A stretch of DNA of 64,000 nt, taken from assembly GCA_044892525.1 (NCBI GenBank), contig CM097886.1:101060001-101124000 (forward strand), read 5' to 3'. The position numbers and the translations under genes are program-made. Within the stretch, counting starts at the first letter, position 1, and the number at the start of each line of letters is the position of its first letter. This document shows, one piece after another, positions 3,650 to 61,482 of the stretch. Source of the stretch: Schmidtea polychroa. Taxonomy: Eukaryota. The notes under the pieces were generated by a model. That model searched no databases and was not told the DNA's origin. It saw only the letters and a program-made list of their open reading frames with translations.

Positions 3650-6600
3650 CGGTGCTAGTATAAGAAGCATTGAACATGCATCATACAATCACTTTTTTAG
3701 TTATTGTCTTTCCATCCCGCCTTCACCGAAGCTCATCATCATCACTACTAGTGTTTGAGTTTATTCATTAATCTCCATGTTTAGCTGTAATGTTGCACCA
3801 AATTTATCCCTATTATTTCTAGACCGTTCTCAGTTGATCCGTGCGCATCGGTTCTGGAAGTGAACGAATCAATGCAAATAGACATCCAATTTACCCCTGA
3901 ACTCCCTAAAGATTTCTCAGATGAAGTTATTATTCATTACGAAACTGGTATGAATGATAATAGAAATGACCATGTGATAATGAATTGCTAGGTGAAGACG
4001 TATACATCCGGATTCACGGATCTGGCAAGGAGATTCCAGTGAGAATAGAACGATCGCTTGTGCACATTGAGGAGACCTATGTCGGATTGGCAAATTTAAG
4101 GAAAATTACCTTGCACAATCGCAGTGACGTAATGATTCATTTCTACTGGAGCAATTTCTCGAGTCAAGTTGCTGAAGATCTGGATAGAGAAACATTTTTG
4201 AAGATACTCCAATTGGAAGAGGACGAAGAACAGGAAAGATTTAACTCTGATGATAATTTAGGATTGCTATCATCTGATAAGCTATCAATTGTTACTCGCA
4301 GTTATATCAATAAAAAGAAAGTAGTGCAGTGTCATTATATGGTCAACTGTAACGGATCCTTTTCAGATGTTTAAAGAAAAGAAATCGAGATTTATTGACG
4401 ATATCTTCACCATTGATCCAATTGAAGGTGACATTTGGCCCCACACGAGTCTTGATATCACTGTGGCTTTCAAGCCCACGGAGGCCAGAACTTATCAATC
4501 ATTTGCGTTCTGTGAAATAACCGGAAGAGAAACCAGATTATCCTTAAAGATAACTGGTGTTGGTATTGGGCCGAAAGTAGAATTCTCATTTAAAACCCTT
4601 GATATGGGATACATCTTTATCCAAGCTCACCACTGCTATGAAATCGTTCTCGTCAACAAGGGTGATATAGATGCGTTATTTAAAATCGAAGGAACAGGAT
4701 CTCCAGTTAGTAAATGCTTTACATTCACACCGGATGATGGCCTCATCAGCCCTGGTAGCCACCAAGTCGTCCAAATACAATTCCAAAGCAAAGAATTCCT
4801 TGGTGCCTTCCATCAACCATTCAAAGTGAAAATGGATGGTTGCATGGAACCTTCTATTATCGATTTCAAGTACATTGATGATAATAAAGATGATAATCAC
4901 ATAAAAGTACCATTGCAGAGGAATAGTCATTGGGCCCACATTTTCATTCAGCGTGCAAAAAATCAAGTTTGGTGAGGTATCTGTAGGTATGTATTGTCAA
5001 TATGATTAATATTCAATAAGATTTACCCCTCCTTTTAGGATTTCCAAGTTCCGAAGAGATTAGTTTGCAAAATACATCTCTAGTTCCGTTAGAGTTTCGG
5101 TTGAGAGTGCCAACTGATGGCACAAGTGATCCAATATTAGCAGCAGATTTGACAAACAGCGTGTCACCAAGGGAATACTGTTCCAAATACCAGCCTAGGG
5201 AATTCTCAATAGAACCTTCCGAAGGTGTGTTGGGCTCAATGACGATGTGCAAGATAAAGGTCATTCTCATAGCCAATAGTATAGGGAAATATCACACTGG
5301 ATTGGTTCTTGACGTGATCGGAGTAGGAAATGAGTTATATTCTATTCCCATTACCGCAACGTAATTTCCGATTATATTGATTATTCAATATTGATTAATT
5401 CAGTGCAATCGTTCCGAAGGCTGAATTATCGTGCGATGAATTGGATTTCAGTCGGTCCTTCCTCCATTACCCCTATGAAAAGATCATCAAGATGTTCAAT
5501 AGTTCCACTTTGCCGATCAAATACGAGATTCTCAAGCAGACAGATAAAACAGAGGACTTGTCATATTCCAGTTCCTTGGATACGGTTAATTTATATTTGA
5601 ATTTATTGAGTCCACTAAATAAGGGACTAGATGTGGCGGTAGAGATAATAGTTCATATATATTAGGGATTCTTAGTCTCAGGTTCTATGAAGAGGGTTAA
5701 GCCGAATGCCATCATACTCTTTGTAAAGTCACTAATCGACTCGGTGTAAACTGGCCCAAGCTTTTAACAATCTGCATAGANNNNNNNNNNNNNNNNNNNN
5801 NNNNNNNNNNNNNNNNNNNNNNNNNNNNNNNNNNNNNNNNNNNNNNNNNNNNNNNNNNNNNNNNNNNNNNNNNNNNNNNNNNNNNNNNNNNNNNNNNNNN
5901 NNNNNNNNNNNNNNNNNNNNNNNNNNNNNNNNNNNNNNNNNNNNNNNNNNNNNNNNNNNNNNNNNNNNNNNNNNNNNNNNNNNNNNNNNNNNNNNNNNNN
6001 NNNNNNNNNNNNNNNNNNNNNNNNNNNNNNNNNNNNNNNNNNNNNNNNNNNNNNNNNNNNNNNNNNNNNNNNNNNNGCAGCATTTATTATTTAAAACAAT
6101 AAAATGATAATTTAAGCCTTTTGCTGCAAATAATGTATTTAATGAAAGAATTTTCGACTATACCATAGTCCTTGTCAAGGACTATCGTATAGTCGAAAAT
6201 TCTTTCATTAAATACATTATTTGCAGCAAAAGGCTTAAATTATCATTTTATTGTATTATTATTATTATTATTATTGTTCTTTACCCAACTCGAATTTTAT
6301 TTAATTAATTAATTAATTAACAATTTTTTGTTTTTTTCATTCCGTTGATTTTCGATCATTTTTAAACGGGTACTTATAAATTCATTATCACCATGATCTT
6401 GGTCCGTTTTTTATCATTTCGCATAATTCGTCATTCGGTTTTTTTATACCATTTAGACTGCTCCTAGAGATGAAGTCACATATTGCGATATTTCCCCATT
6501 GCTAGATGTGAGAATTCCCCTCCCTCCCGCCCCCCTTGAATGTGGACTCCATATTTGGTGTCCCCCGTATCTGGAATATAAATAATAGAGACTGATATAT

Positions 6601-9600
6601 TTCATATATTAGGCAATTGTCCATCCGAATTCAGAACTCGAGATTCCAATTGAACTAAAGGTATACACTATTGGGGAATCGACAACAAAAATGTATTTCA
6701 AAATTTTCGGATCTTCAAAAGAACCTTTAGTTCGACTTCTATATTTTTCGATTGAGAACTTATAAAATCTTTAAGGCTCTTACAATAAAATGCATTGGAG
6801 AAGGTCCTGTTGTCAACCTTGATTCCGTTTCCTTAGATTGGGGCACGATTAAAGTGCTAGAAGATAAGTCTTTCAATCTTCAACTCTCCAATGAATCTGA
6901 AATTCCTGCTATTTTCCATACAACTATGGTAATATCTCTAGATCCCTATGTGATCTTATTTCACTGCATAACTACAGTTGAAAAACCAATCTGTTTTCCG
7001 AGTGGAGCCGGAATCTGGAATCATGGAGCGCCATGCAACACTCAATTTGAATGTCATAGCTAATCTAAATGATTGCGTGAAATTTACAGATGAAATACAC
7101 CTTCACATTGAGAATAGTCAAACAAAGATTGTGCCACTGATGGCTGTTGGATTCGGGACGACAATCGAATTTGATCCGCCAATTTCCTCTCTCATGAATC
7201 TTGGATCTCACTTTAGCAAAAGCAAACTTAATGAGACATTTCGAGTAACAAACAAAGGGAAAAGACATCAACAATTAGTATGGTCTAATGAAGGATATTC
7301 TTACACCAAGGCTATGCGACAGACAGGAACTAAAGTAATACATAGAATGTGCAATCCTTATGACAGTTTCATTTTATATAGAATGCAATCAAAGCTCCAA
7401 TACTGACAGTTCATCCTCACCGATTTGATTTGAGTCCAGGAGAATCGGCAACTCTAATCATTCAAGGTTATGTTGACAAGTAAGAACTCTTTCCTAAAAC
7501 TATTCTTCTTTCATTGATAACTTTATAAATAAAGGCCGCAAGTTGTCCAAGAGCGCATTATGTGCCATTCCATAATCGGTAGGCAAGGCGGCAAAGAGCT
7601 CATTAAAAAAGTAGACTTGGAAGTGAATTTCATTTGCCCTGTTTTAGAATTTTCAGACAGGTCTCTGCACTTCCGACTTGACAAAGTGAGCAGTGAATTG
7701 TTAATCGCCTCCTTAAATTGTAGGATTTAGAGCATAGATACACCATTTGAAATTCTCACAAAGACCATCAACTTTACCAATGTTTCCGGACTCGATCTGA
7801 ATGCTAAATTAACCGTTTCCTATCCTTTCAATATCCTAGAAATGAATGAATTCTCTGTTTGTGAGAAGGTTAATTTGATTCTATCGTTCCTATGCTCACT
7901 ATAACGCCATATCTTTAGCTACTGTTTCTTAATAGCAATAAGATGGAGACCATCAGCATCCAATTCAATCCGCTATACAAATCAGATTTCCATAGCAGAA
8001 TTATTGAGGACTTTTTGAAGGTTTCATTCGATGAACATCCTCATGTAGTAAGCTTTTATATTGGAATGACAGTTTTTTATGANNNNNNNNNNNNNNNNNN
8101 NNNNNNNNNNNNNNNNNNNNNNNNNNNNNNNNNNNNNNNNNNNNNNNNNNNNNNNNNNNNNNNNNNNNNNNNNNNNNNNNNNNNNNNNNNNNNNNNNNNN
8201 NNNNNNNNNNNNNNNNNNNNNNNNNNNNNNNNNNNNNNNNNNNNNNNNNNNNNNNNNNNNNNNNNNNNNNNNNNNNNNNNNNNNNNNNNNNNNNNNNNNN
8301 NNNNNNNNNNNNNNNNNNNNNNNNNNNNNNNNNNNNNNNNNNNNNNNNNNNNNNNNNNNNNNNNNNNNNNNNNNNNNNNNNNNNNNNTTATCGGGGAAGT
8401 CAACTTCCCAAACCTTCAATTCGAACGAACGAAAATCAACTTTGACTGTATTCTGAACCATTCGGAAGTCAGCCAATTCGTTACGATGTATAATATTTCG
8501 CCTTTAGAAGTCCATTATTCCTGGAGTCTTTTAATAGGAGACCAACCTAATATTATCTTTCATCGTCGACTTCGCGAACCAATGGAAGATTTAGAAATTA
8601 AAGAGATCATTTTAGATGCCACTGAAAAAGATACAACGACGGAAAAGTCTATCCAAGAGTATAGCTCACCTAAAGAACATCTCAATTTGGATACATTTAG
8701 GGTTGATGATGATATGCAACCTTCCAAAGACATTGCAATAATTGAGGAAATGAAAATTGATCTAGAATCATTAGAGAAAGTAGAAGAACCTCTCAATATA
8801 GAATCCACCAGCAAACATTCAATATCAATGCTTCCAAAGACACATGAGAAATTTGAAATAAATGAAAAACTAAAAAAATTATTGGACAGTGAAAATGAAA
8901 TCATACCTTTGGGTATTGAGGAAATCTTTGACGTGAAACCTTTATATGGAACTTTGAGACCAAATTCTTTCGAGCAAATCACCTTTACCTATTTCGGTCA
9001 CTCAGACGTTGAGGCTCACGTAAGTGCGATATGTGAAGTTGAAGGTGGACCTACATATCGATTTGAATTGCATGGAGAAGCATCTACTGTGAACTATAAA
9101 TTCAGTGATCTGAATTTTGATTTCGGTCAAATACTCTACGATCAAGTATCATTCAAAGAAATGACTCTTAGTAATCTTGGAAAGGTCGGATTTGAATTCA
9201 CATCAAAAAAGGCGTCATCAACTTTACCAGAAAATCAATTCCCAACCGGCCAACCTATTTTAATACCCTCTTCCGGTTTTGTCGAAGCTTCCAGTGACAT
9301 TCGAATAAAAGTCGGCTATCTTTGCGGATCTCCAGGAAGGTTTTCTGATTCCTGTGACATTCAAGTAGCCCATTTTCCAATAGAAACCATATCGATATCA
9401 GGTCATGGTACATTTCCTAGGGTTACTGTTGAGCTGCCGAGAGATAGCGATATTGTAAATCAATCAACAACTTCCAATTATGACCCCTTTTCAATGAGAG
9501 TATTCTTTGATACCGATAAATCCTTTGCCGAATTCTATCAAGAAACTAAAAAAGAATTTGTTGATAAGAATATTGAAATGTCTGAGGAAGAATTGATGAC

Positions 9601-10900
9601 ATATTTAGAGGACCTCGCAGTGACCAATCAGCAGAATAAACCTTTGAGCAAAGGAATAAACAAGTAGGAACTTTATACTATCATAGACCATATTGAATTG
9701 CTATAGAGCCATTTTACCTAGCTACCAATTGGAGTTTGGAAATGTCATTATTGGCGCTGTTGTATCAAAGACCGTACACATCAGAAATACAGGCCATTTC
9801 TCTATCAATATGAAGATTTTAAAAAGCTCAATGCAACAGTTCGGCTTCTTCATGAACTTACTGCAAGTGAAGAATTTCCCATGCCAAGAGAAATTGGAAT
9901 TTGAAATAAATTTCGATCCAAGAGCGGCAAATTTGAGCTTAGGAGTTGTCGAAAGCTTCCTCATTTTGAACGTAAAATTAATTATTAAACCTTTGAGTTG
10001 GTCTAATTATATCTTAATATAGATAATTGGGGGGCCATCGGTTCCGATATTATTGAATGCAAATGTTACAATGCCTGATCTGAGAACGAGTTCAGAAGTT
10101 GTGGAATTCGATAATGTCAAACTTGGGGAAGCAAAGCTAATCACGATCCAACTACACAATCCAACACCAGTGCAAACAGAATGGACAACATCAACCTCAG
10201 ACATGGATGAAATGCTCAAATCTCGGGAACATAAATCCAATGAACCGAGAACAATACGGAAGAAAAGAAATAAAGCAAAGGAAGATGCAAAACCTTTGGT
10301 ATTTGAAATGATTCCAAGCGCTGGACAGTTGAGACCAGGACAAAGAACTAACGTACAGGTAAGCAATTCTAGATGGGATCCAGTTCACTAAGTTGCCTCT
10401 CAGATCAAATTTATGCCAGTTGAAGAGAAATCTTATTCACATCGACTTGTTATGATACTTGCGCACAGCAGTAAACGCATCGTGGTCAAATGCATAGGAA
10501 ATGGAGTGGAACCCAAACTGGAGTTTAAAGAAAGCTATATTCAGTTCGGACCCGTTTTGCCGTTCACAAATGGAAGCGAAAAGATTATCAATATAAGAAA
10601 TCCTTGCGATTTCCCTATTGAGATTTACAGTCTGGAATTTGATAAATCCTATCTGGAAGTAATTTCCTCCGGTTATACTTTTCCTTGTTATTTATTATGA
10701 AATTAGGATGAAGAAATATTGCGGCATATCAGCGGCTATGACAGTTTCGGGAATTTATTGATGCCTCCGAGAGCTGCAGGAGAGAAATTGCCACAGGAGT
10801 TCATTGAATATTACGATGAATACTTGAAACGCAACATGGACCTTGATGAAGGTCCTCATAAATCATACAAATACAATGAAGCTCCAGAGGTTATTTTAAT

Positions 10901-10952
<52 letters not shown>

Positions 10953-13900: not shown

Positions 13901-16900
13901 TATATATTTGTGGGAATACCCAATGTAAATGTCGTGTTTACAAAGCTCTCAACTAGCTTATCTCTTACAACATTTTAATATCCTTGATGTACCTGCTCTA
14001 GATGCCCTAAATTATTCGTGTCTTGCTTTCCAAGATTCAAGCTCTCTAAATAATCCTCTCCAGAAAATTATTCGATGTTGTAAATTTATCAATGATCGCC
14101 AACGTCTACAAGGTTATTGAAGGCCATTTAATATTTCTATTTATCACTTCTATCATATTTGCCCCTTGACTAGGAGATTATATTGTTATCACTGTAAAAT
14201 TATATATTCAATATTAATATTTCTTGAAGTATTACTAGTACTCTTTAGGTTCCGTTGTGGGAATAACTGCTATGCATAATATGATGCAAGCATCACACAA
14301 CAGAAAGACAAGTACTGTTTCAAACGTGGGCCGCCATTTACCTAAGCAAGTTAGTTCCAATAAGGATCATGGAACGGATAAGACTGACTCCAATACATAC
14401 CTTGTCAGTTATTTATTCTTTATGGAATATTTATATTGTTCCTATAGCTATGCTCAAGTCCGCCTCCATTAGCGGGGCCAGCTATGATGAAATTGAACAT
14501 TCAAATCCCCGGGGAGAACATCAATCTAGTGAACTGTATCCTCCCAGACGAAGTGATCATAGAGATTCTCAGTGAACGGTTAATGCTCAATGATTGTCAA
14601 AAAGGAATCGTATTCGACGGACTCGAATGCATGTTCAGCCAAAGTCAGTCATGTACAGCCCAACTGATTCTCCACTCATTAAATAACAGGCGATTTTTGT
14701 ATTTTATTACTCTGAAAAAGGATTTCAAATCCATAAAAGAAGAAGAAAACGATCAAGAGGAATTGAAAAGGATTTTGAAAGCGAAACAAGAGCAAGAAGA
14801 ATTGATATGGATGCAGGAAATGACGGAAGAAGAATACGAAATGTTAGACGATGAAACAAAACGACAAGTTGAAGAGAAACGCATAAAACCTCGTAAAGAG
14901 AAAATGAAACAAGAAAAGGAAGAAAAGGAAAGAGAACGTATATTGCAGGAACAAGAAGCGGAATTGCAAAGGCTTAATAATGACAAGTATTGTGTACTTG
15001 TTACTGATTGTATATGATAACCATTTTAAGAGCAAAACTGAAGGCCGGCAAAAAGCCCATTCCATCTGATGACCGTGGCAAATCTAAAACAGGAAAAGAG
15101 ACATCAATGGGGAAAAACACGCGTGAAAATACAACATTAACTAAGGAGCCCGTCCTAACTACAATGGAGAAACATGTTCCTGAACGGCCAGACTCACACA
15201 TGACAGAAATGTCGAATGAAGCGGATGATATGTAAGCGATTTTGATTTTCTGTTCCTTTCTCTCCTATTATCTATCTTACCTTACACCTTTATCATATTT
15301 CCAGAAAGAGAAAGAAAACTAAAATCATGGATAAAAAGTCAGTAGGAAAGATCGATGAAATATCAAAAGAATCCCAGGAGTCCATCGATGAAATAATGAA
15401 AGATCCTAAAAAAGAACAGGAATGGCTTCTTCATCAAAAGTTTCATTCTAATTTCAATTTTAATTTATTGACCATTTGAAAAGATTTAAGACCTTTGATA
15501 CCGAATACAAGCAAATCAGTGAAATTGTCTCATTGTGGGACCGAGCCCATCCACCAATCAAGCCGAATCAGCTCCCAGCAGAGCAGCATGGAGAAAACAT
15601 TAATGAGGAAAATTCAACCAATCCATTAAAGCGCGTTGGTCGGACAACAGTATTTAATAAAAGAAGCAAAGATCATGGAACAAATTTAGGTCAAGTTTTG
15701 TCTCATACCCCGGTTCACGATGAATACCCAGAACATAATGCTGAAATCATCATCAATAGTTCCGAGGAATCTCCAGGTGTTCCAAATCTAATCATAGAAG
15801 TATCGAAAAAATCCAAATCTGAACGAGAGAAGATAATTGAACAAAAATTAGAAAATGAATTACCGAAGATCGAGGAAGTGCTAGAGGGTCTAGGTCTTGG
15901 TGACAAAGGTCCTCCTATCCCTCCACCAGCAACCTTTAGTATTGTTCAGTATCCAATTAGAAGACGAGCTCCAAATATCTCTGAAATGATAGGAGAGAAT
16001 GGACATTATAACTTTATGGGTACATTAGAAGACAAAGATGACGAAAAGGGTTTGAAAGACATAATGGAAAAGGATGAAGATAAACTTTTTGAAAAAGTAT
16101 TTTTTGGTAATAATTATTCAATACTATTCACTATTAAAATAGATCAAAGAAGATTCGAATACCCAAGCATCGACGACCAAACCAATACGTCCTAAGAAAA
16201 GCGAAGTTTACGTTAAAGAAAAAAATTCCAAGGATAGAAAGAGTTCAGGTAAAAAGTCAAATTTATCAAGTTCCATCAGACGAGGATCTCAGTCAGCCGC
16301 ATCCGTCAACAGCATTTCAACTCCGATATCTGACGACGGATTCAAGTTTTCATTCAATTTTTACTACCCCTTTATTATTGAATGTCAGAGTGCTAACCCA
16401 TCGATGGATCATTCAACCCGACTCAGAGATCAATCTAAGACTCCGATTCAAATCTGACGAACTGGGCCAATTTGACCAATCTTTTAATTTTGAAATTCTT
16501 GATACCCGCAGAAAGTACCAAGTGTTTTGTCGGGGTATTTGTGCCTTCCCGAATATCAGTAAAGAACCAAGAATCGTATTCCCACGTCGGAAGAGAAACA
16601 AAGAGAACAATGAAATCGTACACAAAAAATACATCTTAGAAGAGGAAGTATTTGAGTTTGGCCCCTTATTAATACAGAAGGATAAACAAAGGTAGAATTG
16701 ATTTATATTTCACATGAAATCGATAAAATTGATATTGCACTATGTCATTGTGTCATTTTGATTATTTAATTATTTACTTTCTTCCTTACATCCATCACTG
16801 TTTTAATTTTTGTTGTAGATACACATTATCTTTATTTGTTACTTATTATTGTAAATAGTATATTATAATTGATTATATAAAGTGATGATTTTGTAATAAC

Positions 16901-19900
16901 AGCATTAATTAAATATTGAACAATTAAATGGTAATATGAGCCTTTTGCTGCGAAGTATATATTTGTTTGGGTTCTTAAATTTGAAATTTTTAAATTATTA
17001 AAAACAAATATCGAAAATTAAAATTTGAAAAATGGGTCAGATGTAAATGAAATTGTTAGGGTTGAGTCTGGGCACGTTTGGGGCTTGCTGAGGCGTATAA
17101 ATCAGTAATATATCGATGTTTGTTGATACTCATGAATTTTCGGCACTGCCTTTTTCAAGTGAAAATATCAATAATTAGTAATCAAATATTGATTAAATTA
17201 AGTAATAATTATAAATTGCAACAAATAAAGAATAGGTCAATATAGCTAGTAATTAATAAATAATAAATCACTATAAATAGTAATTAATAAATAATAAGTA
17301 ATAAAAATAGTAATTTTTATTGTATTTTTAATTTTAAAATTTAATATAAAAAGAAGAGAATTTTCAGAGATAAGGACGATAAAACAGATATAGAATCATT
17401 TTCTAGAGTAATTATACAAAGTAATTAGTTATAATAACCAGAGGCAAAATCAGAGGGAAAAATCTCAGGATTTCAGGCAGAACGGAAAGGAAATTATCAG
17501 AATATTGTGTAAAGAGATTAGAAAGCCAAGATATTTTGCAGTTTATTCAAAATAAAATCAAAGTTACCAAAATGTATTAACGCTTGTCATCTTTAAGTTA
17601 CCTCAGGGAAATATTTAAATTAGTAGAAAACCATACTTGCGAAAAAACATAAATTGGCCACCAAGTAGACTAATTATAGACTAATTATTACAGTTTTAAG
17701 CAAGGTTTAAATTATAACTGGGAATAAGCATCAGTTTTCTAGGGGAACTGTTTTGCTTGTATATTCTTTTGAAATAGCAAAGGGTAGTTTATCTAGGAAA
17801 CGTTACTACCAATTTCTGGATAGTAAGCTATCGTGCTAAATTTCGGGCAACCCTCGTCTTTTTCTTATCATTGTTGAGCGGTGCTGTTGATGAATTAGGA
17901 TCCTGCATTCGCCGTCTTTGAAATACCTGAGAACGGTTTGTATAAACGATATCTTTTGAGTTGCAAGTTTTATTGTTATTTTGTCAATCATATTTTTATT
18001 TATATTTCATATAATTAAATTTTCATATCAAATAAAGCGTTGCGTTCTAAAATTTGAACACAGATCTTTGGAGTCAGATCAAAGGAATGTATGTTAGTGG
18101 TACAACCCACTTACGAACTTAACAAAATGATGGGAAAGATCATGGTGAGAATAGGTTCATCAGAATATGTTCAGAAAGGGTAGAAATGCAAGAAAACGTA
18201 CAAAATCGGAAAATAGTTAATTAATTAATTAATTAAAGAAAACCCAAGTTAAGTGAGCAGAGAATAAAATAAATAAACAAAATTTAGGGAAATCATTATC
18301 ATGGTAGAATGAATAATGGGAAACGGGGAAAAGATAATCACAAGGGAGGCGCACCGTGGGGTAATTAATTATTTCTTTCGAAGGAGAAAAATGAAAGGGC
18401 CGCGATGCAAAGATTGTCAAAGGGAGGAGGTGATTATTGTTGAAGAACGTGCTGAACCATAGAGGTTACAGCGAAACTTAGTGAATAGTCAGAATAGGAA
18501 TTTTATTGCCGAATATGAATCAGTAAAGTTACCAAAAAACATCGATATCTTTACTGATTCATAGTCAAATATTTTCTAATAAATAAAATGTCTATTGAAA
18601 AGAAATCAGAGAAAATTGAANNNNNNNNNNNNNNNNNNNNNNNNNNNNNNNNNNNNNNNNNNNNNNNNNNNNNNNNNNNNNNNNNNNNNNNNNNNNNNNN
18701 NNNNNNNNNNNNNNNNNNNNNNNNNNNNNNNNNNNNNNNNNNNNNNNNNNNNNNNNNNNNNNNNNNNNNNNNNNNNNNNNNNNNNNNNNNNNNNNNNNNN
18801 NNNNNNNNNNNNNNNNNNNNNNNNNNNNNNNNNNNNNNNNNNNNNNNNNNNNNNNNNNNNNNNNNNNNNNNNNNNNNNNNNNNNNNNNNNNAAATGATAT
18901 ACAGCATGACCATAGATCATCATATTGATATGATCTTTTTCCAGAATCATGGCCGGCAGATATCCAGAAAATATGGAACAAATTATAATAAAAAATTCGT
19001 CACCAATGCTTGCAGAAATTAACTTCAGCTTCCTCCATGACTCAAACTGTGACCGGTTCTCATTAGATCCTTTAAGTATGACTTTGCAGCCGGAAGAATC
19101 TCAGAAATTGAATCTTTGGGCTTTTCCAAGATTCGCCCAGAAATTTGAGGATGCTATAATCTGTTGTGTGAAAGAAAACCCAGAACCAGTTATCTATAAG
19201 ATTTCCTGTCTGGGAGTGTCACCTTTTGTTGAATTGGACACTAAGGTCATCCATTTCGATAGAGTTCTCCTTCACAGGTATCCTTTCATTTATTGAATAA
19301 AATATCTAGACAAACAATTTGTATTTAAAGGAAAGATATGAAAAGTATTTACTTGCGTAACAGTACCGCTCTACCAGTCCATTGGAGGATTACCGGACTC
19401 GAGAGTCTGGGTGATGAATTCTCATTTGCTCAGGATGGTGGAACAATCGAGCCACTTTCCGAGTTTAAATTGAATGCATATTTCCGTGCAATGAAACCCT
19501 ATAAAGCAAATACGAAAAAGAACATTAGACTGGAAATATCGGACGTAGATGAGCTAGCGGGAATCTTGCAGACAGAAACGGTACAAATACTTGCCGAAGC
19601 ATATGACGTAGCCCTGGATATGAGCTTTCCTAAAGGTTAATAATCCATTATTAATTCCTCATTCCATGAATATCACGACGCCATTCACAATTATGGACCT
19701 AACATTTATATAACATAATTCCTATATAAGAAATATATAAGGATAAATTTCATATCTGTCGTTTTGTACAATGGAAATTTGACAATACTTTCTGTTCAAC
19801 ATTTCTTGCAGAAATTTGGCATATTTTACATTGATTGGTTTGATTTCTATTTTAGATGCATTAAATATTGATCTGATGAAAATTGTGTATTGAGGAATTT

Positions 19901-22900: not shown

Positions 22901-25900
22901 NNNNNNNNNNNNNNNNNNNNNNNNNNNNNNNNNNNNNNNNNNNNNNNNNNNNNNNNNTAAGCCTTTTGCTGCGAATAATTTATTTAATGAAAAAAATTTC
23001 GACTATAAGATAGTCCTTGTCAATCTCCTGGAATTTAGCAATCTCCTTCACGAAAATACATTTCTATCTTTCTTTTATTTCCTTTTTCTTAATTCTCATT
23101 GGTTATAAATATAATATAATATACTTTCATTTTTCTGGATTTTTTTTTTAAAATTTTACTTAAAATTAAAATTAAAATTAAAATAACATAAATATCATTT
23201 AAAATTCAAAATGACAAAAACTAAAACCTTTAAATTTTTTTAAGCTTCTATAATTAGATTCTAGAAGCCTAATAAAATATTTCAAAATATTTTAAAATAA
23301 AGCCTCCAATAACCATTTATATACGCTATTTAAATATTTCAATAAATGTGTCAATTTTAATTTTTAAATCCTATTTTTTGAAAGCATATTTCCTAAAATT
23401 TTCTATATTATTTTAATTATTACTTTTTTTTTAAATTTATTATATTTTTTTTATATATTATCAGATATTCTCAAGGTCAATGACAACAGACCAAATTCAT
23501 GATTTCATTGATTTCTTCTTTAGTGTTGATCTTTAGCTGTCTGTTTATGATGAGAATTGCTTCTTTGAATCTGACATTTTTCTTTTGGATGTTTCCATTA
23601 GCTATGATTTCGATTGAAATATTTTTTCTTTCCTCTATTGGCTGACATTGTTGGAGATGTGTGTTTATCGAGGATGTTCCACCAGGATTTAGATGTTCTT
23701 TAACTCTTTGGCTAAAATTTGTCGAAAATCTTTTTATTAAATATATTATTCGCAGCAAAAGGCTTAAATTATCACTTTATTGTTTTAAATAATAAATGCT
23801 GCTACCANNNNNNNNNNNNNNNNNNNNNNNNNNNNNNNNNNNNNNNNNNNNNNNNNNNNNNNNNNNNNNNNNNNNNNNNNNNNNNNNNNNNNNNNNNNNN
23901 NNNNNNNNNNNNNNNNNNNNNNNNNNNNNNNNNNNNNNNNNNNNNNNNNNNNNNNNNNNNNNNNNNTAATCAGGAATGAAAATGTGCTTGTCGGAGGTAG
24001 TCAAAGTCGTCAACAATTCGGAAACTTTACCCTGTTTCCTGCGAGCGGGCTGGTTGCGACAAGGAATTCAATGATAGTTACAGTGGACTGCATCTCAGAT
24101 AATCCTGGGAAATGTGATGAAGTAATTAGGAACTATTTTATTGAACATAAATGATCATAGTGATAATAATAATAATAATAATAATAAAAATTTGCTTACA
24201 GAATCTTATCATTGAAATAACGGACCGGAACCCAAAGATTGATACCAATGGTGTCCTATATCGTCTATTTGTAGAGGCGTTTGTACCCAGCATTGACTGC
24301 AATAATTTGAGCTCAATATTTGAGGAGCACAGAATATGTGATACAATCACCGTCATTAATAAGGAATTATATCTCGTAACCTATAATTCACAGTGCTATA
24401 TAATATTATTATTTGTTCCTTAGTTATGTTCGGGAGGCATTTATGGGAAATTGGAAAATAGATTCTTATTTACAAATGTTTTGGTTGGAAGCAAAGTTGA
24501 AGCTAGATTCAGACTTGACAATCCGAATAATATTCCATGCGACATAAGCCTATCATTGAAACCTCTTCATGGAGGAAGGAGTTCTATTGGCGGAAGGGGC
24601 TCAGCTTCTGTGGGTGACATATTTGAAGTTGAACCAACAAAAGTCCAAATTGAACCGAGGGGATTTATTTATCTTTCAATTATTTTCAGCCCTCTCGCTA
24701 TGCAGGTTTTTAATGTATATATAAAGGAATAATTCTTTAATTGAATTAGCAATATATCGCAATCTTTGATTGCAACATTGAAGGCCTACCCTCCAATAGC
24801 CCATATAGAAGCAAGGCTTTATCATTTGAGGTTTGTGGAGAAGGATATTTACCGAGGGTTGTAGTAACCAAACCAACTTTACGTAACAAAAAGAGTCAGT
24901 ATCTGTGTTTATTCAAAAAGTCACTATTGGGGAAATTACAATCACAGAATGTAGAGATTTTCAATGACGGATNNNNNNNNNNNNNNNNNNNNNNNNNNNN
25001 NNNNNNNNNNNNNNNNNNNNNNNNNNNNNNNNNNNNNNNNNNNNNNNNNNNNNNNNNNNNNNNNNNNNNNNNNNNNNNNNNNNNNNNNNNNNNNNNNNNN
25101 NNNNNNNNTCTTTTTCACTATTTATTTCGATAGCATTACTATCATCATCATCAGGCTACCTACATTCACTAGGAATGAATAACTATACAATATTGATAAT
25201 TTATAAACAAATTATTAAATCTATAAATTTTTAAATTCTAAATAACAATTTTAAATAATTATTTTCAAAAATAATTTTCCACAAACATTATTTTTCACTT
25301 TTAAAAATTCTTTAAAAAAATATTATTTTAATTAGTTTTTTAATTATGTAACATAACTATTATTAATATACATCAACGCACAAAAACTTAATTAAAAACA
25401 TTCAACACACAAGTATTCACTGCATTCTGCACATTGATTTTAGGATTAAAAGTTCTTATCAATAATGCTTCACATATCACACGCTCAAAACAATTATCAA
25501 AGTTTTTTGATAAGATTTTAAAATCCGACATTCCTATTTCTCTCATACAGACTTTATTGTGATCCTTAATATTGGACACTCCCTTCGGTTGACAGTGTTC
25601 TTGAACTCGAGTATAGAGATGACAGGAAGTCTCTCCTATGTATGTGGCATTACACCCATTACATGTGAATTGATAAACGAGATCCGAACACAATCCAACC
25701 GGCGTTTGAGATTTACTAACAAACATACTACGTACTTTGCACGATTTTGAAACAATTCTATAAATCAATGTACCCAACTGTTTACCAATCTTTCTTTTGA
25801 AATCTTTATATCCTTCCGAATACGGCAATACCATCGTATATTTTGGCTCAAACTTGTTTGTTAGTATTAATACTCACATTCACTACATCATTCGACATAT

Positions 25901-26317
25901 CAGTCAATTTGCATTCATTCATACTACGATCCTTAGCATTACTCATACATTTATCAACAGTCTCTTTCAACGTTAATAATAAAAACCGTTTTGAGTAGCC
26001 ATTCTTCACCAGTAATTCAACTAATTTATCTACACTTTTACTGATTTTTTTAAGTGGAAGATAAGCACCATGATCGATAAACCAATCCTTTCACCATGTT
26101 TCTCATATTTAAATTCACAAAACCTCTCTGAGGTAGTATAGAGGCCGGTATCTGTTGGTTTTCTGTGAATTTCTGTCTCATATTGTTCATCTTTATGTTT
26201 AATTAATAAGTCAAGAAATGCTATGGATGAATCCTTCTCAGTTTCATATGTGAATTTAATGTTCTTATGCAACCCATTCATGTAATGCAAAAATGGTTTC
26301 ACATGTTCATTATTTTA

Positions 26318-28502: not shown

Positions 28503-28561
<59 letters not shown>

Positions 28562-31500
28562 TAAAATGATAATTTAAGCCTTTTGCTGCAAATAATGTAT
28601 TTAATGAAAGAATTTTCGACTATACGATAGTCCTTGACAATAATAATAATAATAATAATAATATCTGATAAATAGAGTTTTTTGATCGAGGATATTTCGT
28701 TATTACTTAAAAATAGATCTAGCAAACAAAACAAATAGTAATATATAAAAAGATAGAAATCTAATATATAATATATAATGAATAATAAATCTAATATATC
28801 AAGACAAATAATAAAACTAGAAAATAAATTTAACCTTATTATATTGCTTATAATTTGTCAGTAAAATATATAAAATTAAATAAATAAGATATACAATAAA
28901 TATTTTATAAATTTATCATAAATTTTAGTGTAAATTTAGTATTGTACTTTTATAGTATTGTACTGTATAAAATTCAACAAATAGACTTTAATACTTCTAA
29001 ATTTTTCATGTTGGAAACATATTTATTACACATGCTAACATTATTAAAAAACAAACGAACGGACACAGAAGTTATGCGCTAATGGATGATGAGTGACTCA
29101 TTGACATATTACGATTCATAACGTTTTGTATTGTTTATATGTTTGCTAAGTGAATAAGCAGACTTAGATTTGGTTAGACAAATAATAATAATAATTTTGT
29201 ATTGTGGTTAGAACAGAGGTTGTGATAGGGTCCCCTTGTTCTCAATCACAATCAGAAATAAGTTTTATCTGTACCACCAAATCACAACTGTACCGATTTT
29301 CACTGACAAAATAAAAGCTCTCACTTGATATTGATGAGAGACGACCCAAACGGAAACCGCCTAAAGCTGAATGGATTTGATTTAGCCTCTAAATGATTTT
29401 CGGTTTCGTCTAATTGTTTGGTTGCTTTCTTACTAGTTGCAGCTTTTTTATAGGGCTCACCTCTCATCCATCATTTGCAAATAAATAAAATATCGGTTGA
29501 TTGATTTCATATTTTGCACATTAATTTATAAATTTTTAATAATTTCAGTGCGGCTTTCAATTTACTTCCCAATCAGTCGGGGTAACAGAATCATTCTGGC
29601 GATTTGAAATTCCTGAAATTGGAATCAACGTACCTTTCCTCATTGTTGGTCAATGCACAGAACCAAATGTCACTTTCGATAAATCCCATTTCAAATTCCC
29701 CGCTCTTCTCATTGGTCATGAATCTGTGGAAACTGTTGAAATCATCAATTTCGATAACCAGCCATATCATTTCGCCTTCCAAGATATCAGTCGTCACGCT
29801 CCAGGTCACAGCAACAGTTTGAAAATTGAACCGATGCATGGAATTATCCCGAGTTGTGGGAAAGTCTCAATCCATATCGGATTCACAGCAACACTTAATC
29901 AGACCCTTAATTTCAATTTGATATGTCAAGTTGATAAGAAAACTTATCCTTTGTCTGTTAATGTCAAAGCAGAAGGCTATTCGGTCGACAGCACAGTTTG
30001 GTATGAGGATGTCACTGGTCATAGTGTCGAGTTGACTCCATGTTCAAAGAATAGTGATCAGGAGGTCTACAATAATATCGATATAGGTCGTATGGAAGTT
30101 GGTGAACAACAAACGACGTGGATAACATTAGTAAACGATGGAAGATTCAATTACGATTTCAATTGGGATATAAAATGGAAAGATGATCCAAAACTAAACA
30201 GCATGCTCCTGCTTACACCAATTTCTGGCACCGTAATTATAGGAGAGAAGCTAAGATGTGACCTTCGTATAATTGCAAACAGACCGGCTACCTTGCAAAA
30301 GGTTGTTGCTGCCTTAACAATAGGATATGGCAATAGCTATCTCTTGAACATCACTGCAGACATTCATCGGCCGATATTGGAATTTTCATTCTCCAAGCAT
30401 GATTTTGGGCATTGCTTTGTATATCGAGCGGGCATGAAACAGTTGACAACGGAATTGGTCATAACCAATAGAGACTCAAAAGATTCGAACCAGAAACCCA
30501 TCAGTGTTGAATGTCTCACCGAATCAAACGATGTCTTCATGCACAATTTCGAAGTTGCTGTTATTGTTCCTGGCTCATCAGCAACTATTCAAATCACATT
30601 TCTGCCTCGAAAACCAAAAAAATATCAACAATCGCTTCTGTTTGAAATCAACGGTATCTCAAGGCATTCGGTTGATTTAACGGGATATTGCGAGGAATTG
30701 AAACTCGAGGCCATTGACCTTCCCAACCATACAATCAATCTCGGAATGGTGAAAGTAGGAGAAAAGGTTTCCAAAACAGTCACCATTGCCAATACGACCC
30801 ATGTACCTGTGACATCGAAATTGGTATTTTCACCGACATGTGAAGAGCTGCAACAACGAGGAGTGTTCAAAATTACACCTTTAGGTATTTGATTGATATA
30901 TTATAATTTTTGTCAGTAGTATATAATTTATGCCAAATAGAGCTTTTCATTTATTAGTGTGACCTTGACGCTTCCTAGTGTTTTAATTATTTAATGTAAA
31001 TTTTGATTAAATCTTGATATGACATCAATTTATTGTTCATGACTTCTCACCACCAGATTACAGGGGTTTTACTAATATGACGTAACGTCACATATTTCAT
31101 GGCATATTTCGTTCGTATTTCCCTTATAATGGCAGGAGAGAAAAATTCTACAAAATGAAGGCGTGAAAGAATAAATTCTTCGGGTGAATGATAATATAAA
31201 TGTTTATCAGAATGCAAAGGATGTAAAAATGGAGAGCTTCAAACAATTAGCCTTAGGGGGAATAATACCAGGTAAATCAATCAGAAGTGCAATAGATAAT
31301 ATTTCTTTTACAATTCTTTTGAATATTAATACGAAGCCCGAATAAAGTCATAGCCACAAGTGTATATCATTTGATCCTAAAGTGTAATAAATAGAAAGTT
31401 AGGAAGTCAAATAAAGAATTTTTTGTGTAGATATTAGAGACTCAAATCCTTGATCCAAACAGTCCGATCACTCAGATCATGAACCGTTTATTGAGTGGCC

Positions 31501-50531: not shown

Positions 50532-50542
50532 CTCCCCTTCTT
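50532..50542 (-). other. Polypurine tract of the gypsy element
   Basis: AAGAAGGGGAG lies immediately 5' of the 3' LTR on the minus strand. Confidence 0.85.
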
Positions 50543-54660: not shown

Positions 54661-54671
54661 CGTGGTCGCCA
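54661..54671 (-). other. Primer-binding site of the gypsy element (tRNA-Arg type)
   Basis: TGGCGACCACG is complementary to a tRNA 3' end CGUGGUCGCCA, as in tRNA-Arg(UCG) as I recall it. It overlaps the last LTR base. Confidence 0.7.
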
Positions 54672-54823
54672 GTTAAATTCATCTTTAAATCCATCTTTAA
54701 ATTTCTCAGCAAAAGTCTTGAAACCAACAATATATATATTTGATCAAACAAAATAATAAGTTCTTAATTTTTTCACAAAAACCGCCACTCCAATTATTAA
54801 AACAACAAGATATCTAACTATTA

Positions 54824-55458: not shown

Positions 55459-58072
55459 ACTATTATAACGCGCTTTTTTGTTTGTAATATATACAGCGGC
55501 TTAAAATCAATAAGCAGGTGAGCTCCATTGCCATAACTACCCCTCATTGCTTTTTCACCTTTGGGTTCATGACTTCGCTTTATCATTATACTTCCATTTA
55601 TTGGATTATTGTTTCTTGCTCGTTTAGTTATGGTCTTCATTATTTGCTGTTATTCAATGTTATTTTCAAATTTTTAAGTAGGAATCCACCCTTATTTCTC
55701 AATTTCGATAATTTTATTTTGTTGGGTTTTTGTGCAAGTCGGTATTACTGTCTGATTATTTTATGTTCTTTTCGAAATTAAGTAAATTAAGTAAACACAA
55801 AAATCTTTATTTGAGACTAATACAGTTGCACTTTGGTTACACTTTTTATGAATTCAACCACACTTGATACAACCTTTTTTTGATCTGCACTTTTCAATAC
55901 AACTGCAAATCTTACGTAGGGATAAATCTTCCAACGGGAGATGTCCCTTTCTTGTACGCTCGATTTAAACTACTGAATTGATACTAACTTCAAAGTTTTC
56001 TTTGTCACTCTCACTAAATTTCTCGTTTCTTTTTCTTCGACCAACTGGCAATTCTGTTTACTTGCCGGTCGCTTTTATACCCATTTTGTAATTGATTTTA
56101 CTTTGTCAAATTAGTCTGGATCCAACTTCTCCTTAGGCTTCCTCTTGTAGCTCTCATTGCTTTGAGGAATTTACTCGTCTCCTTTGACGGCTTGCCCCAA
56201 TTTGATTTTAGCCGACTGATTTAATTGCCTTTCCTAATTTGATTGATAATTCAGGTTCTCTCAAATCGCTCGGGTTTTCCATCGTCTCGGGTTTCCCACT
56301 ACCTCGGGTTCTCCATTAGTTAAGTAATTTTAGTTTTTTGTAATTTATTCCTTCTAGGACCCCCCCCCCCCATTGAGATTATTTTATTATAGTTGAGCTC
56401 GTCTCATTATTCAGTATCCGCCCATACCAGTTTCCCCCGGAAAATATTCATTTTTAATTTTTTGATTTTTTTAATTATAATTTTGTACTTAAAATTTTTA
56501 TTGTGGATTTGGTGTTTTTATTGATTTTTACCTCATTTTGTACCTCTCTTGTTGAACCCCAACAATTTCTAGATCTTCTATAATGATTGTTATTGGTAAA
56601 TAATAGTCTTCGTTGTGAGGATGTAAGCGATGGTGGGTTACAAGTGTGCATTCTATTCTATCGTTACTCGTAATTTATCCTCTTTCTTTTCTTTACAGTC
56701 TGCATTCACTGATTACATATTTCTTAACTCTTTATCCTCTTTTGTAATGATAGAATTCCAATAAAGTTAAATCATGATAATTGTAAATAAATAACTTGAA
56801 TAATATAAAGTATGACGCATGACCGCTGACTCATGCCACGTCAAATGACTAAACACTAACATGATTCATATTTTACATAAGCATATGAGAACGCTATGCA
56901 CTGGATGGCTCGCATCTAATTACTCTTGACAGCTATTCAACGATAACGGATAAATCACAAGATATCTTATATCTTGACAGTTGTCTGAGATAACAGATGA
57001 CTTTGACAAAGATCGAAGAGTTGAAATTGAGGAAAAACTACAAAAACATTGAATTACGTAGAAGTGAAATAGAAAACTATAAAAATCAGACACTAATTGA
57101 TTCGTTGAAAAAAGTGGCATAAAACACCGAAGCAAAGAAAAAACGCCAAAATAAACTTTAAATTATTATCATAACGTTTTTTTCAAAAACTCAAGGGTGT
57201 ACTTTGTTTTGAATAAAAGTGAAATCGGAAACAGAAATTAAGGTAACAAACCAATTGATACAAATATATTGAAAAAATTCAATCAAAGAGGCAGTCGAAT
57301 GGTTATTGAGTTTGCTATTGCTAACTAGGTTGTAGTGAGCCATTACACGGCCTTAACAATATCTATATACATATTATACTATATTATATTATATTATATT
57401 ATATTATATATATAAATGCGCGGTCACCAATGAATAAGGACCAAGCAGAACACAATTATAGTCAATCAAAATTCGTGCGATCAGCTAATACTTCTACTTA
57501 TCAATCAGGCTCTATTAATCCATCTCAGACGAGTAAAGCAAATTCGATGCCATGTTATCATTATCAAGATAAACTGTATTCGGCTCCCAATAGTTTTAGT
57601 GTTGGCTCTCATAGACCAACACCCTCATCCATTACAATTCGCGAAATACGTAACAAATCCTAACAATAATATGAACCCGAATAGATCTTTTTATCAAACC
57701 ACCAAATTTACAAATTCTGATCAATGTGATTATGCAAAAAAGGATCAGAACGGTAAAGGATATACATTTCCTCAAATATTGTATGCGAATGACAATGGTC
57801 AAATTGGTTCATGGACAAATCGGCAGGCTGTAAAATCTTTAGAAATAATTAGTTAATATTTAGTTAAATATTTATTTAACATTTTGTAAATGAGAAATGG
57901 CTGTTGAATATGTTTATCTGGTCTGATTATATTTACATTTTTATGTAGTTTAGATTATATATTTTTGTTTTACTTATACATAAGTAAATTTTGTAATTTA
58001 AATAAAAACTGACATTAACTCTTTATGATTTATTTTATAAGTTTTTAATTTTATCAGCCAATTTGTAGAAAA

Positions 58073-58400: not shown

Positions 58401-59115
58401 CATACAGTAGCTTGCTAACTGTATTTGGCCTTACATATTTATTATGCTGTAGTTATTTTTATTAATAAATTTTTGCCTATTGAGTAGTTGTAGTAGGAGG
58501 AATCAAATCGATTGTAATTATGATAGTCAATTAATATCGGTAACATTAAGAATCTGTTATTGTTAATATGCCAAGACGCGCCTGAAATCAGGTCGATAAT
58601 TGATAATATTTAATTTCACCGACAACCTCAACAAATAAAATATTAATATAATTTCTTGAATATATTATTATCCAGAAATTATATTATTATTATTATTATT
58701 ATTACCATATTAAATCCATAAGATATACAACGATAAAATTTATAAAATTTGAAAAAAGAAAAATTTTCCAAGCTAGTCATAATTTATAAAGAAATCGAGG
58801 GTGAAGTCTAAAAATTCAAGAGCTCGAAAGAAATTGTTTTCTCACAGGGATAATAGCGTTGAATCGAGTTCTGTTTGCAATTTTGCTGGAAGTTTCGCAG
58901 ATTCAATGCCATAATGCCGGCCCCTATGATCTTTTATTTATCACGAAATTGAGCCATTTTTCATTTGGATTCTCATTAATGTGATCAAGATCAAGATTAG
59001 TAATAATGGTTGATCAGAATGGTTAGAAATATCCGCATGAGAACACTTTCTAGATTTGATGAAATTTGAAGAATTCATTTAAAATATTTTTTGTAAATGT
59101 TTAATAGTAAAATGA

Positions 59116-61413: not shown

Positions 61414-61482
61414 AGATTGATAAGGAATAGTCGAAAATTTTTTCATTAAATACATTATTTGCAGCAAAAGGCTCAAATTATC
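61414..61482 (+). mobile_element. Copy of the hammerhead-containing short element (U7 variant, stem II deletion), between N gaps
   Basis: AGA-TTGATAA-GGA[7-nt deletion]ATAGTC-GAAA-ATT-T-TTTC-ATTAAATACATTATTTGCAGCAAAAGGCTCAAATTATC. Confidence 0.8.

What the first reader, a model, noticed from the sequence alone, without database searches (positions are those of the whole stretch)
6144..61482. Dispersed family of minimal hammerhead ribozyme candidates with a compensated U3:A8 core, tied to Penelope-like elements
Seen in sequence: six motifs read [stem I]-TTGANAA-N-[stem II]-GAAA-ATT-H-[stem I'] or a damaged version of it (6144-6178 -, 6172-6206 +, 17129-17163 -, 22989-23027 -, 28606-28640 -, 61414-61444 +), plus a half copy at 23721. 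Position 7 varies (C, U, A) as expected. Stem II differs completely between subfamilies (GACTAT/ATAGTC vs GGC/GCC), as does stem I (GAGA/TTTC vs TTCAC/ATGAG), while the core is kept. All are followed by the 3' motif GCAGCAAAAGGCT. Established knowledge: C3 and G8 form a tertiary Watson-Crick pair that U3:A8 can replace; an extra nucleotide after A9 occurs in natural hammerheads such as CChMVd(+); Penelope-like elements carry minimal type I hammerheads with short palindromic stem III thought to cleave as dimers. Inference: this is a lineage-specific ribozyme and non-autonomous PLE-derived family that searches for CUGANGA would miss.
Basis: partly seen in the sequence, partly recalled or inferred. 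Interest (0 to 1): 0.88.

Follow-up and report, generated by a model that had tools for sequence, protein, structure and literature searches.

The report
Penelope-element hammerhead motifs, U3:A8 core
The repeats are broken 3' end pieces of Penelope-like retrotransposons that carry a minimal hammerhead ribozyme motif whose C3:G8 core pair is swapped for U3:A8; the motif is real, but this variant was published in 2014, so this is a new example of a known thing.

Summary
A full minimal-hammerhead descriptor finds 4 sites in the window against 0.013 expected from shuffles, and none with 17 scrambled-box decoys. Three sites carry U3:A8. A covariance model found a fifth, decayed site behind a second PLE gene remnant.

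Relatives of that PLE protein on public contigs carry the same motif beside the gene. One full-length element (L041) has U3:A8 in both flanking repeats. Stem II covaries strongly. Positions 3 and 8 are U:A (12), C:G (5), U:G (1) and one unpaired (a register artefact) across 19 aligned motifs.

The copies also show the usual PLE insertion marks: 5' truncation, head-to-head inverted copies, an optional 3' extension, (TAA)n at junctions and adjacent assembly gaps.

Every family A copy here is truncated or mutated, so they look like relics. Cleavage is untested. U3-A8 PLE hammerheads were reported in Schistosoma mansoni in 2014, so the motif is not lineage-specific.

The parts
22958..23034 (-). 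Family A copy, the only one keeping both strands of helix I. It reads GGAGA UUGACAA G GACUAU CUU AUAGUC GAA AU U UUUUC (core 22995-23023). The AAUU palindrome is mutated to AUUU, and the 3' end is cut by gap 22790-22957.
   Evidence: 47.6 bits
6077..6178 (-). Family A copy truncated at its 5' end inside the core, with no 5' strand of helix I. It carries the 3' extension TTTTAAATAATAAATGCTGC after TTATTG and is cut by gap 5781-6076. It is the left arm of the palindrome 6092-6258.
6172..6262 (+). Family A copy, right arm of the palindrome. The core reads UUGUCAA (A6 to U). It ends at TTATTG followed by (TAT)n.
28547..28641 (-). An 83-nt family A copy, 100% identical to 6172-6254, with the same 5' end (UUGUCAA). 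It is embedded in (TAA)n on both sides.
23721..23807 (+). Half copy of family A that starts at GUC GAAAAUC. It carries the 3' extension and is cut by gap 23808-23966. It lies head-to-head with the 22958-23034 copy, about 700 nt away.
61414..61482 (+). Family A copy sitting as an island between two gaps. The core is UUGAUAA and the 5' strand of stem II is deleted.
17124..17169 (-). Type B U3:A8 motif: UUUCAC UUGAAAA A GGC AGU GCC GAA AAUU C AUGAG. It is complete. Helix I can extend to 3+5 bp with a 2-nt bulge.
   Evidence: (38.9 bits)
16897..16964 (-). A 3' tail homologous to the family A tail (GCAGCAAAAGGCTCATATTACCATTTAATTG...AATGCTG), 170 nt downstream of the type B motif.
   Evidence: score 73 against 32 +/- 4 in shuffles, 0/500
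25391..26314 (-). A 5'-truncated Penelope-like element gene remnant: the RT C-terminal region (26033-26314, 56% identical to P0125) and the GIY-YIG endonuclease (25391-25873, Pfam PF01541 E=7e-6). (TAA)n lies at its 5' junction (about 26309-26400).
25113..25162 (-). Canonical-core minimal hammerhead in the 3' UTR of that PLE, 234 nt after the stop codon: GUAGC CUGAUGA (UGA) U GAUAG UAAUG CUAUC GAA AU A. An extra UGA, seen by comparison with L003/L004, blurs the register, and no helix I is left. Gap 24973-25108 follows.
   Evidence: 36.9 bits
31747..31796 (-). Decayed hammerhead (U3.G8, G10.1.U11.1, GAA AUAUAU C) about 250 nt downstream of a second PLE gene-end remnant at about 32042-32140(-).
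   Evidence: repeat D17; 23.9 bits, E=0.002; not in the seed

Best explanation
The repeats are 3'-terminal pieces of Penelope-like retrotransposons (PLEs), or of short non-autonomous elements that PLEs mobilise. Each piece has a minimal type I hammerhead motif followed by a tail of about 55 nt, and some also have an optional extension of 25 nt or more. The motif has a short helix I, the core U3-U4-G5-A6-N7-A8-A9, one unpaired base, helix II closed by G10.1-C11.1, G12-A13-A14, and no helix III hairpin, only the palindrome AAUU before C17.

Shown here: the motif is far commoner than chance. Helix II covaries. Positions 3 and 8 switch together between C:G and U:A across related elements. The same kind of motif sits next to PLE RT/GIY-YIG genes, both in this window and on public contigs.

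Inferred from published work on PLE hammerheads: in a transcript of a master element, two motifs pair through the palindrome to build helix III, and the RNA cuts itself after C17 (GAAAAUUC^). This may need help from the PLE protein. The PLE RT/endonuclease then copies the RNA into AT-rich or microsatellite DNA. Starting reverse transcription at either of two internal sites gives copies with or without the extension, and often produces 5'-truncated and inverted head-to-head copies.

The family A copies in this window are truncated or mutated. They lie mostly in introns of a HYDIN-like gene and are most likely inert relics.
For: Motif enrichment: 4 hits against 0.013 expected and 0 hits in each of 17 decoys. 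With any base allowed at positions 3 and 8, no uncompensated core appears; the only extra hit is an alternative (A,G) register of the 25154 site.

In 13 aligned motifs, U4, G5, A6, A9, G10.1, C11.1, G12, A13, A14 and A15.1 are invariant.

Pair counts on 19 motifs aligned to the model: 91% of cells paired against 69.5% in shuffles; covariation score 0.66 against 0.29 (0/500 shuffles reach it) and at most 0.13 when partners are slid. The 3-8 pair is UA:12, CG:5, UG:1, other:1.

PLE gene remnants in the window are followed by hammerheads on the same strand.

Public contigs found by protein homology alone: L002, L003 and L004 have CUGAUGA-U-GAC..GUC-GAA-(AU palindrome) 75-145 nt after the stop codon. 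L041 is a full RT+EN PLE with UUGAAAA motifs in both flanks. L044, a 42%-identical PLE from the same sample, has CUGAUGA with a nearly identical stem II.

A metagenome scan found a roughly 278-nt dispersed family, 'M', with UUGAGAA-G-GACGU..ACGUC-GAAAAUUC, usually as head-to-head pairs.

The insertion marks match the published PLE traits: 5' truncation, an adjacent inverted truncated copy, an optional 30-40 bp tail, microsatellite bias and assembly trouble (PMC8557442; PMC11167929).

The architecture matches published S. mansoni PLE minimal hammerheads, including U3-A8 (PMC4209133).
Against: No family A or B copy in the window lies next to a PLE gene. Tail similarity between family A and the gene-linked PLE tails is not above chance in this AT-rich sequence.

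No family A copy is intact.

Rfam hammerhead models do not match, either at the gathering threshold or at E<=10 on small pieces.

Folding energies are no better than shuffles (z -0.5 to -1.5). The AAUU helix III would be only four A-U pairs and does not appear in the predicted dimers of A or B.

Part of the pairing signal is built in, because the descriptor and the scan pattern required a stem II and allowed only C:G or U:A.

Published PLE minimal hammerheads cleave poorly in vitro. In the Anolis PLE, cleavage is not needed for insertion in vitro.
Confidence: 0.8

Rival explanations
1. The motif is a true descendant of the PLE hammerhead, but in the U3:A8 lineages it no longer cleaves. It is kept as an RNA structure that the PLE protein binds, or that marks the 3' region used to start reverse transcription.
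For: PLE minimal hammerheads cleave very weakly in vitro. The Anolis PLE inserts in vitro without hammerhead cleavage, its ribozyme needs the protein, and no RNA-seq reads end at the cleavage site. Naiad PLEs thrive without hammerheads. The motif sits only about 55 nt from the element's 3' end.
Against: A compensating double change at the tertiary 3-8 pair, together with invariant U4, G5, A6, A9, G12, A13, A14, is what selection on the catalytic fold predicts. A plain protein-binding hairpin would not need those unpaired bases.
Confidence: 0.15
2. The resemblance is chance. The repeat is the hairpin-bearing 3' end of a LINE or SINE with a (TAA)n tail, and the flanking TTGANAA and GAAA strings are accidents of AT-rich sequence.
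For: The loose string is not enriched. The copies are 5'-truncated and end in a microsatellite, as many LINE and SINE copies do. There are no Rfam hits.
Against: The full descriptor gives 4 hits against 0.013 expected and 0 in each of 17 decoys. The independent type B motif and family M share the core with a different stem II. U3:A8 motifs flank a full PLE gene on L041. Head-to-head terminal copies and an optional 3' extension are PLE traits, not LINE traits.
Confidence: 0.03
3. The functional unit is the long palindrome, not the hammerhead. The head-to-head copies at 6092-6258 are transcribed into a hairpin RNA that feeds small-RNA pathways.
For: The 83-nt arms are 98% complementary. Generic miRNA-precursor models match below threshold (up to 60 bits against cut-offs of 100-230). 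Family M also occurs mostly as inverted pairs.
Against: The miRNA matches only reflect a long perfect hairpin, and all are far below the gathering scores. Inverted truncated copies are a known by-product of PLE insertion. This does not explain the conserved core bases.
Confidence: 0.02

Closest known systems
Minimal hammerhead ribozymes of metazoan Penelope-like elements, in particular the U3-A8 variant of Schistosoma mansoni Cercyon PLEs (Cervera & De la Pena 2014, PMC4209133)
   Same: Type I motif without a helix III hairpin; helix I of 4-5 bp; long helix II; one unpaired base between A9 and G10.1; G10.1-C11.1; palindromic 15.2-16.2; U3-A8 in place of C3-G8; mostly single truncated copies; paired motifs on opposite strands 100-700 bp apart.
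   Different: The family sequences (stems I and II, and the GCAGCAAAAGGCT tail) could not be matched to any published sequence, because no supplement is held. The organism is not identified. Helix II is 6 bp in family A and 3 bp in type B, against 7-8 bp in the main S. mansoni families.
Poseidon PLE of Anolis carolinensis (PAc; PMC11167929)
   Same: A hammerhead beside the gene. In L041 the start codon lies in the core/stem II junction, as in PAc. There are two alternative 3' ends that differ by an optional tail.
   Different: PAc has a C3:G8 core. Its cleavage and protein dependence were measured; nothing was measured here.
Sm-alpha / Sj-alpha SINE-like elements and animal non-LTR retrozymes (type I hammerheads in short non-autonomous repeats)
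   Same: Short dispersed non-coding repeats that carry a type I hammerhead, thought to be mobilised in trans and recently linked to PLE flanking repeats.
   Different: Those have the canonical CUGANGA core, a real if short helix III, loop-loop contacts, and tandem direct arrays. Here there are no tandem arrays, no helix III hairpin and a U3:A8 core.
CChMVd(+) hammerhead with an extra nucleotide after A9
   Same: One extra unpaired base between A9 and G10.1, a comparison also drawn by Cervera & De la Pena.
   Different: That is a type III viroid ribozyme with three full helices. It is unrelated in origin.

Membership tests
PLE minimal hammerhead (min-HHR) | Core boxes N3-U4-G5-A6-N7-N8-A9 and G12-A13-A14, A15.1-U16.1, H17, with positions 3 and 8 able to pair | tested here: met
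   Met at 22995-23023(-), 17134-17158(-), 6148-6178(-) with U3:A8 and at 25123-25154(-) with C3:G8. Not met at 6172(+) and 28610(-), where A6 is U. 61414 lacks half of stem II and 23721 lacks the 5' half.
PLE minimal hammerhead (min-HHR) | One unpaired nucleotide between A9 and G10.1 | tested here: met
   G in family A and M, A in type B, U in L002, L003, L004, L041, L044 and L046.
PLE minimal hammerhead (min-HHR) | Helix II closed by G10.1-C11.1, with compensatory changes between families | tested here: met
   The closing pair is GC in 17 and GU in 2 of 19 motifs. Five of the six stem II pairs show changes on both sides. 91% of cells are paired and the covariation score is 0.66 against 0.29 in shuffles. 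Part of this is built in by how the motifs were found.
PLE minimal hammerhead (min-HHR) | No helix III hairpin; palindromic 15.2-16.2 that allows a dimer | tested here: met
   AAUU in the family A consensus, type B and family M. AUAUAU or AUUAAU in L002, L003, L004, L041 and L044. Lost in 22995-23023, which reads AUUU.
PLE minimal hammerhead (min-HHR) | Short helix I (4-5 bp) flanking the core and the cleavage site | tested here: inconclusive
   Family A: GAGA/UUUC, including one G.U, is seen in only one copy. Type B: 3+5 bp with a bulge. Family M: only 2-3 pairs. The copy at 25123 has none.
PLE minimal hammerhead (min-HHR) | Location in the flanking repeat or 3' region of an element encoding RT plus GIY-YIG endonuclease | tested here: inconclusive
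   Met for the C3:G8 site at 25113-25162 and the decayed site at 31747-31796, both behind PLE gene remnants, and for U3:A8 on L041. Not shown for families A and B: no gene is adjacent, and tail similarity to gene-linked PLEs is not significant.
PLE minimal hammerhead (min-HHR) | Self-cleavage 3' of position 17 | not testable with these tools
   This needs transcription and cleavage assays or end-specific RNA sequencing.
PLE insertion signature | 5' truncation, adjacent inverted truncated copy, optional 30-40 bp tail, microsatellite target bias | tested here: met
   Variable 5' ends. Head-to-head pairs at 6092-6258 and at 22958/23807. Two kinds of 3' end: TTATTG plus (TTA)n, or TTATTG plus TTTTAAATAATAAATGCTGC.... 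(TAA)n at the junctions of four insertions. Traits as listed in PMC8557442.
Canonical three-helix hammerhead (Rfam hammerhead families) | Match to an Rfam hammerhead covariance model, which includes a helix III hairpin | tested here: not met
   No match at the gathering threshold over the window, and none at E<=10 on the three regions holding the U3:A8 motifs.
Animal non-LTR retrozyme / Sm-alpha type | Tandem direct repeats, each with a type I hammerhead | tested here: not met
   No direct tandem of the motif in the window; copies are dispersed or inverted.

The most novel reading that the evidence does not exclude
U3:A8 hammerheads ending in GAAAAUUC may form a separate, widespread branch of short PLE-dependent elements. 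Candidates are family A and type B here, the roughly 278-nt family M in another sample, and L041-type autonomous elements. In that case the switch from C3:G8 to U3:A8 would have happened more than once, giving a natural and repeated test of the tertiary pair seen in the 2006 crystal structure. These variants might cleave only with help from the PLE protein.
Probability: 0.2. Interest if true: 0.5.

Novelty: new member of a known kind. Interest (0 to 1): 0.3.

Why it matters
The finding shows that a reader without tools can spot a ribozyme variant that the standard Rfam models miss. It also adds independent natural examples of the C3:G8 to U3:A8 swap: L041 against L044 in one sample, families A and B here, and family M elsewhere. 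These support the tertiary 3-8 pair as a selected feature of PLE hammerheads. For annotating this genome, it explains a repeat family, several assembly gaps and (TAA)n arrays inside a large cilia gene as PLE debris. It does not open a new class of ribozyme.

Tried and rejected
- Rfam scans for hammerhead families found nothing. The only matches were sub-threshold miRNA models driven by the palindrome.
- My first working idea was a LINE/SINE or Helitron-like 3' end with a chance hairpin. I dropped it after the descriptor, decoy and PLE evidence.
- I tested tail homology between family A and the gene-linked PLE tails (window 31640-31752, L002, L003, L041). It is not above chance, so I do not use it, although the MAFFT alignment looks suggestive.
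- Folding energies and predicted dimers are uninformative for such short AT-rich RNAs.
- I tried to name the organism. An intronless NAA10-like gene has flatworms as its best-scoring named hits at about 74% identity, but mammals reach about 80% over less of the protein. A HYDIN exon finds only two unnamed fragments. The organism stays unidentified; a flatworm is a weak guess.
- tblastn with PLE proteins against the 36 metagenome loci found no gene next to family M.
- The supplement of the 2014 paper and Lunse et al. 2017 are not held. A search for papers on C3U/G8A mutants found nothing.
- I did not read or infer the letters of any N run. The 3' end of the PLE at 25 kb stays unknown beyond base 25109.

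Full report
**What is in the sequence**

The window is 33% G+C and has 15 runs of N. Exons of a HYDIN-like cilia gene lie on the plus strand from about 4 to 38 kb.

They belong to one repeat family, here called A, with six copies:
- 6077-6178(-)
- 6172-6262(+)
- 22958-23034(-)
- 23721-23807(+)
- 28547-28641(-)
- 61414-61482(+)

There is also a separate motif, B, at 17124-17169(-). A tail homologous to the family A tail lies 170 nt further on, at 16897-16964(-).

Several details need correcting:
- The copies at 6172(+) and 28610(-) read UUGUCAA, so A6 is lost.
- The two copies near 6175 are the arms of an 83-nt palindrome and share the same seven core bases.
- 28558-28640 is identical to 6172-6254.
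- 61414 has lost one strand of stem II.
- 23721 is a half copy.
- 22995-23023 is the only copy with both strands of helix I, and it has AUUU where the others have AAUU.

No family A copy is therefore an intact motif. Type B is complete.

**Is it more than chance?**

The loose string is not enriched: 3 hits against 1.1 expected.

I then wrote a full minimal-hammerhead descriptor. It requires:
- a core with either C3:G8 or U3:A8;
- 0-1 unpaired base;
- stem II of at least 3 bp closed by G10.1-C11.1;
- GAA;
- a palindromic A..U stretch;
- H17.

It finds four sites in the window. Three hundred dinucleotide shuffles give 0.013 per window. Seventeen decoy descriptors with scrambled boxes give zero hits each on the real sequence. 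With any base allowed at positions 3 and 8, no uncompensated core turns up.

**Penelope-like elements in the window**

The fourth descriptor hit, 25123-25154(-), has the usual CUGAUGA core. It lies 234 nt downstream, on the same strand, of an open reading frame with a GIY-YIG domain (25391-25873, Pfam E=7e-6). Just upstream is an RT C-terminal piece (26033-26314) that is 56% identical to a PLE protein. The element is 5'-truncated at a (TAA)n array, and its 3' UTR runs into gap 24973-25108.

A covariance model built from 13 motifs was run over the window without filters. It recovered all seed sites and one new one, 31747-31796(-), at 23.9 bits and E=0.002. This is a decayed motif (U3.G8, G10.1.U11.1) about 250 nt behind a second remnant of the PLE gene end at about 32042-32140(-).

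**Relatives elsewhere**

A phmmer search with the endonuclease piece found 2,661 proteins at E <= 0.001. I fetched ten contigs that encode them and looked beside the gene:
- L002, L003 and L004 (58-64% identical) carry CUGAUGA-U-GAC..GUC-GAA-(AU palindrome) 75-145 nt after the stop codon. Their stem II sequences differ and compensate.
- L041 encodes a full 818-residue RT+EN protein. It has GUCAC UUGAAAA U GGUA..UACC GAA AUAUAU in both flanks, the first overlapping the start codon.
- L044 comes from the same sample and encodes a 42%-identical PLE. It has CUGAUGA with an almost identical stem II.
- L046 and L045 are canonical.

One scan of metagenome contigs for UUGANAA-N-GAC..GUCGAAAAUUC returned 36 loci. 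Twenty-three of them are one dispersed family, M, of about 278 nt. It usually has a diverged inverted copy of the motif head-to-head just upstream. No PLE gene lies on those short contigs.

**Covariation**

In the 13-sequence alignment, U4, G5, A6, A9, G10.1, C11.1, G12, A13, A14 and A15.1 are invariant.

On 19 motifs aligned to the model:
- the 3-8 pair is UA in 12, CG in 5, UG in 1 and unpaired in 1 (the last is a register artefact of the UGA repeat at 25150);
- stem II is 91% paired;
- the covariation score is 0.66, against 0.29 in shuffles (0 of 500 reach it) and at most 0.13 when the partners are slid.

Two cautions apply. The descriptor and the scan pattern demanded a stem II and allowed only C:G or U:A, so part of this signal is built in. 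Cells also count sequences, not evolutionary events. The gene-linked contigs were found by protein homology alone and are the fairer sample.

**What it is and how it probably works**

The architecture matches the minimal hammerheads described for metazoan PLEs. Cervera & De la Pena 2014 report for Schistosoma mansoni a short helix I, a long helix II, an unpaired base before stem II, G10.1-C11.1, palindromic 15.2-16.2, paired motifs on opposite strands 100-700 bp apart, and explicitly a U3-A8 variant with about 1,300 hits.

The arrangement of the copies also matches published PLE insertion traits:
- heavy 5' truncation;
- an inverted truncated copy next to the 5' end;
- an optional 30-40 bp tail explained by two reverse-transcription start sites;
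- a bias for microsatellites;
- trouble for short-read assembly.

That last trait fits the five gap edges that abut family A copies.

The likely mechanism is that of PLE hammerheads in general. Two motifs pair through the palindrome, the RNA cuts itself after C17, and the PLE RT/endonuclease inserts the copy. Cleavage itself is inferred, not shown. Published PLE minimal hammerheads cleave weakly, and in Anolis cleavage is protein-assisted and not needed for insertion in vitro.

**Weak points**

- No family A or B copy sits next to a PLE gene in this window.
- The tail of family A is not significantly similar to the tails of the gene-linked PLEs.
- Rfam hammerhead models do not see these motifs.
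- Folding energies are unremarkable.
- A four-pair A-U helix III is weak and is not predicted in the dimers of A or B.

Whether family A is a non-autonomous element or just truncated copies of an autonomous one cannot be decided here.

**Verdict**

It is not a new or lineage-specific kind of ribozyme. It is a further example of the U3:A8 PLE hammerhead published in 2014, and in this window it is seen as decayed copies.

Noticed in passing
window 25391-26314 (-) and about 32042-32140 (-): Two 5'-truncated Penelope-like element gene remnants (RT C-terminus plus GIY-YIG; a second gene-end fragment). Each is followed by a hammerhead motif on the same strand.
   Followed up: yes
window 6259-6281, 26309-26400, 28500-28557, 28641-28665, 32387-32470: (TAA)n arrays sit at or near the junctions of four PLE-type insertions. 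Other (TAA)n arrays (10889-10990, 37456-37575, 58664-58703) have no PLE piece beside them. This suggests microsatellite targeting, but I did not test it statistically.
   Followed up: partly
window about 4000-38400 (+): Exons of a HYDIN-like cilia gene (HYDIN/CFAP65-type Ig-like domains and the Hydin ADK-like domain). Most PLE pieces lie in its introns. The copies on the sense strand (6172, 23721) are both disabled, while the best-kept motifs (22995, 17134) are antisense. There are too few copies to call this selection.
   Followed up: partly
window 42919-43425 (-): An intronless open reading frame for an N-alpha-acetyltransferase (NAA10/NAA11-like). The best-scoring named hits are flatworms at about 74% identity. 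It may be a retrocopy.
   Followed up: partly
window about 44700-55500 (-): LTR-retrotransposon coding pieces (gag, aspartic protease, two RT segments at 46281-46997 and 51260-51931). Direct repeats 97-99% identical lie about 4.3 kb apart (50329-50531 and 54671-54819).
   Followed up: no
window 6092-6258: The head-to-head family A copies form an 83-nt-arm hairpin that draws sub-threshold matches to many miRNA-precursor models (up to 60 bits against cut-offs of 100-230). This is a generic hairpin effect.
   Followed up: partly
window 11094-11413; 12800-12919; 40951-41317: Three tandem arrays: a 20-nt unit in about 16 copies, a 40-nt unit in 3 copies, and a G+C-rich unit of about 43 nt in about 9 copies.
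   Followed up: no
window 18252-18338 and 21685-21771: Another repeat (94% identical over 87 nt). The second copy starts directly after gap 21517-21684.
   Followed up: no
L005-L040 (contigs Ga0126325 to Ga0126334): A dispersed family of about 278 nt with a U3:A8 hammerhead motif near its 5' end, usually preceded by a diverged inverted copy. It ends in ...AAAATGGCCTG and comes from one group of metagenome contigs of unknown host.
   Followed up: partly
L042:30-100: This public metagenome contig begins with what I recognise from memory as an Illumina/Nextera adapter sequence, so its 5' end would be an artefact. No tool checked this.
   Followed up: no
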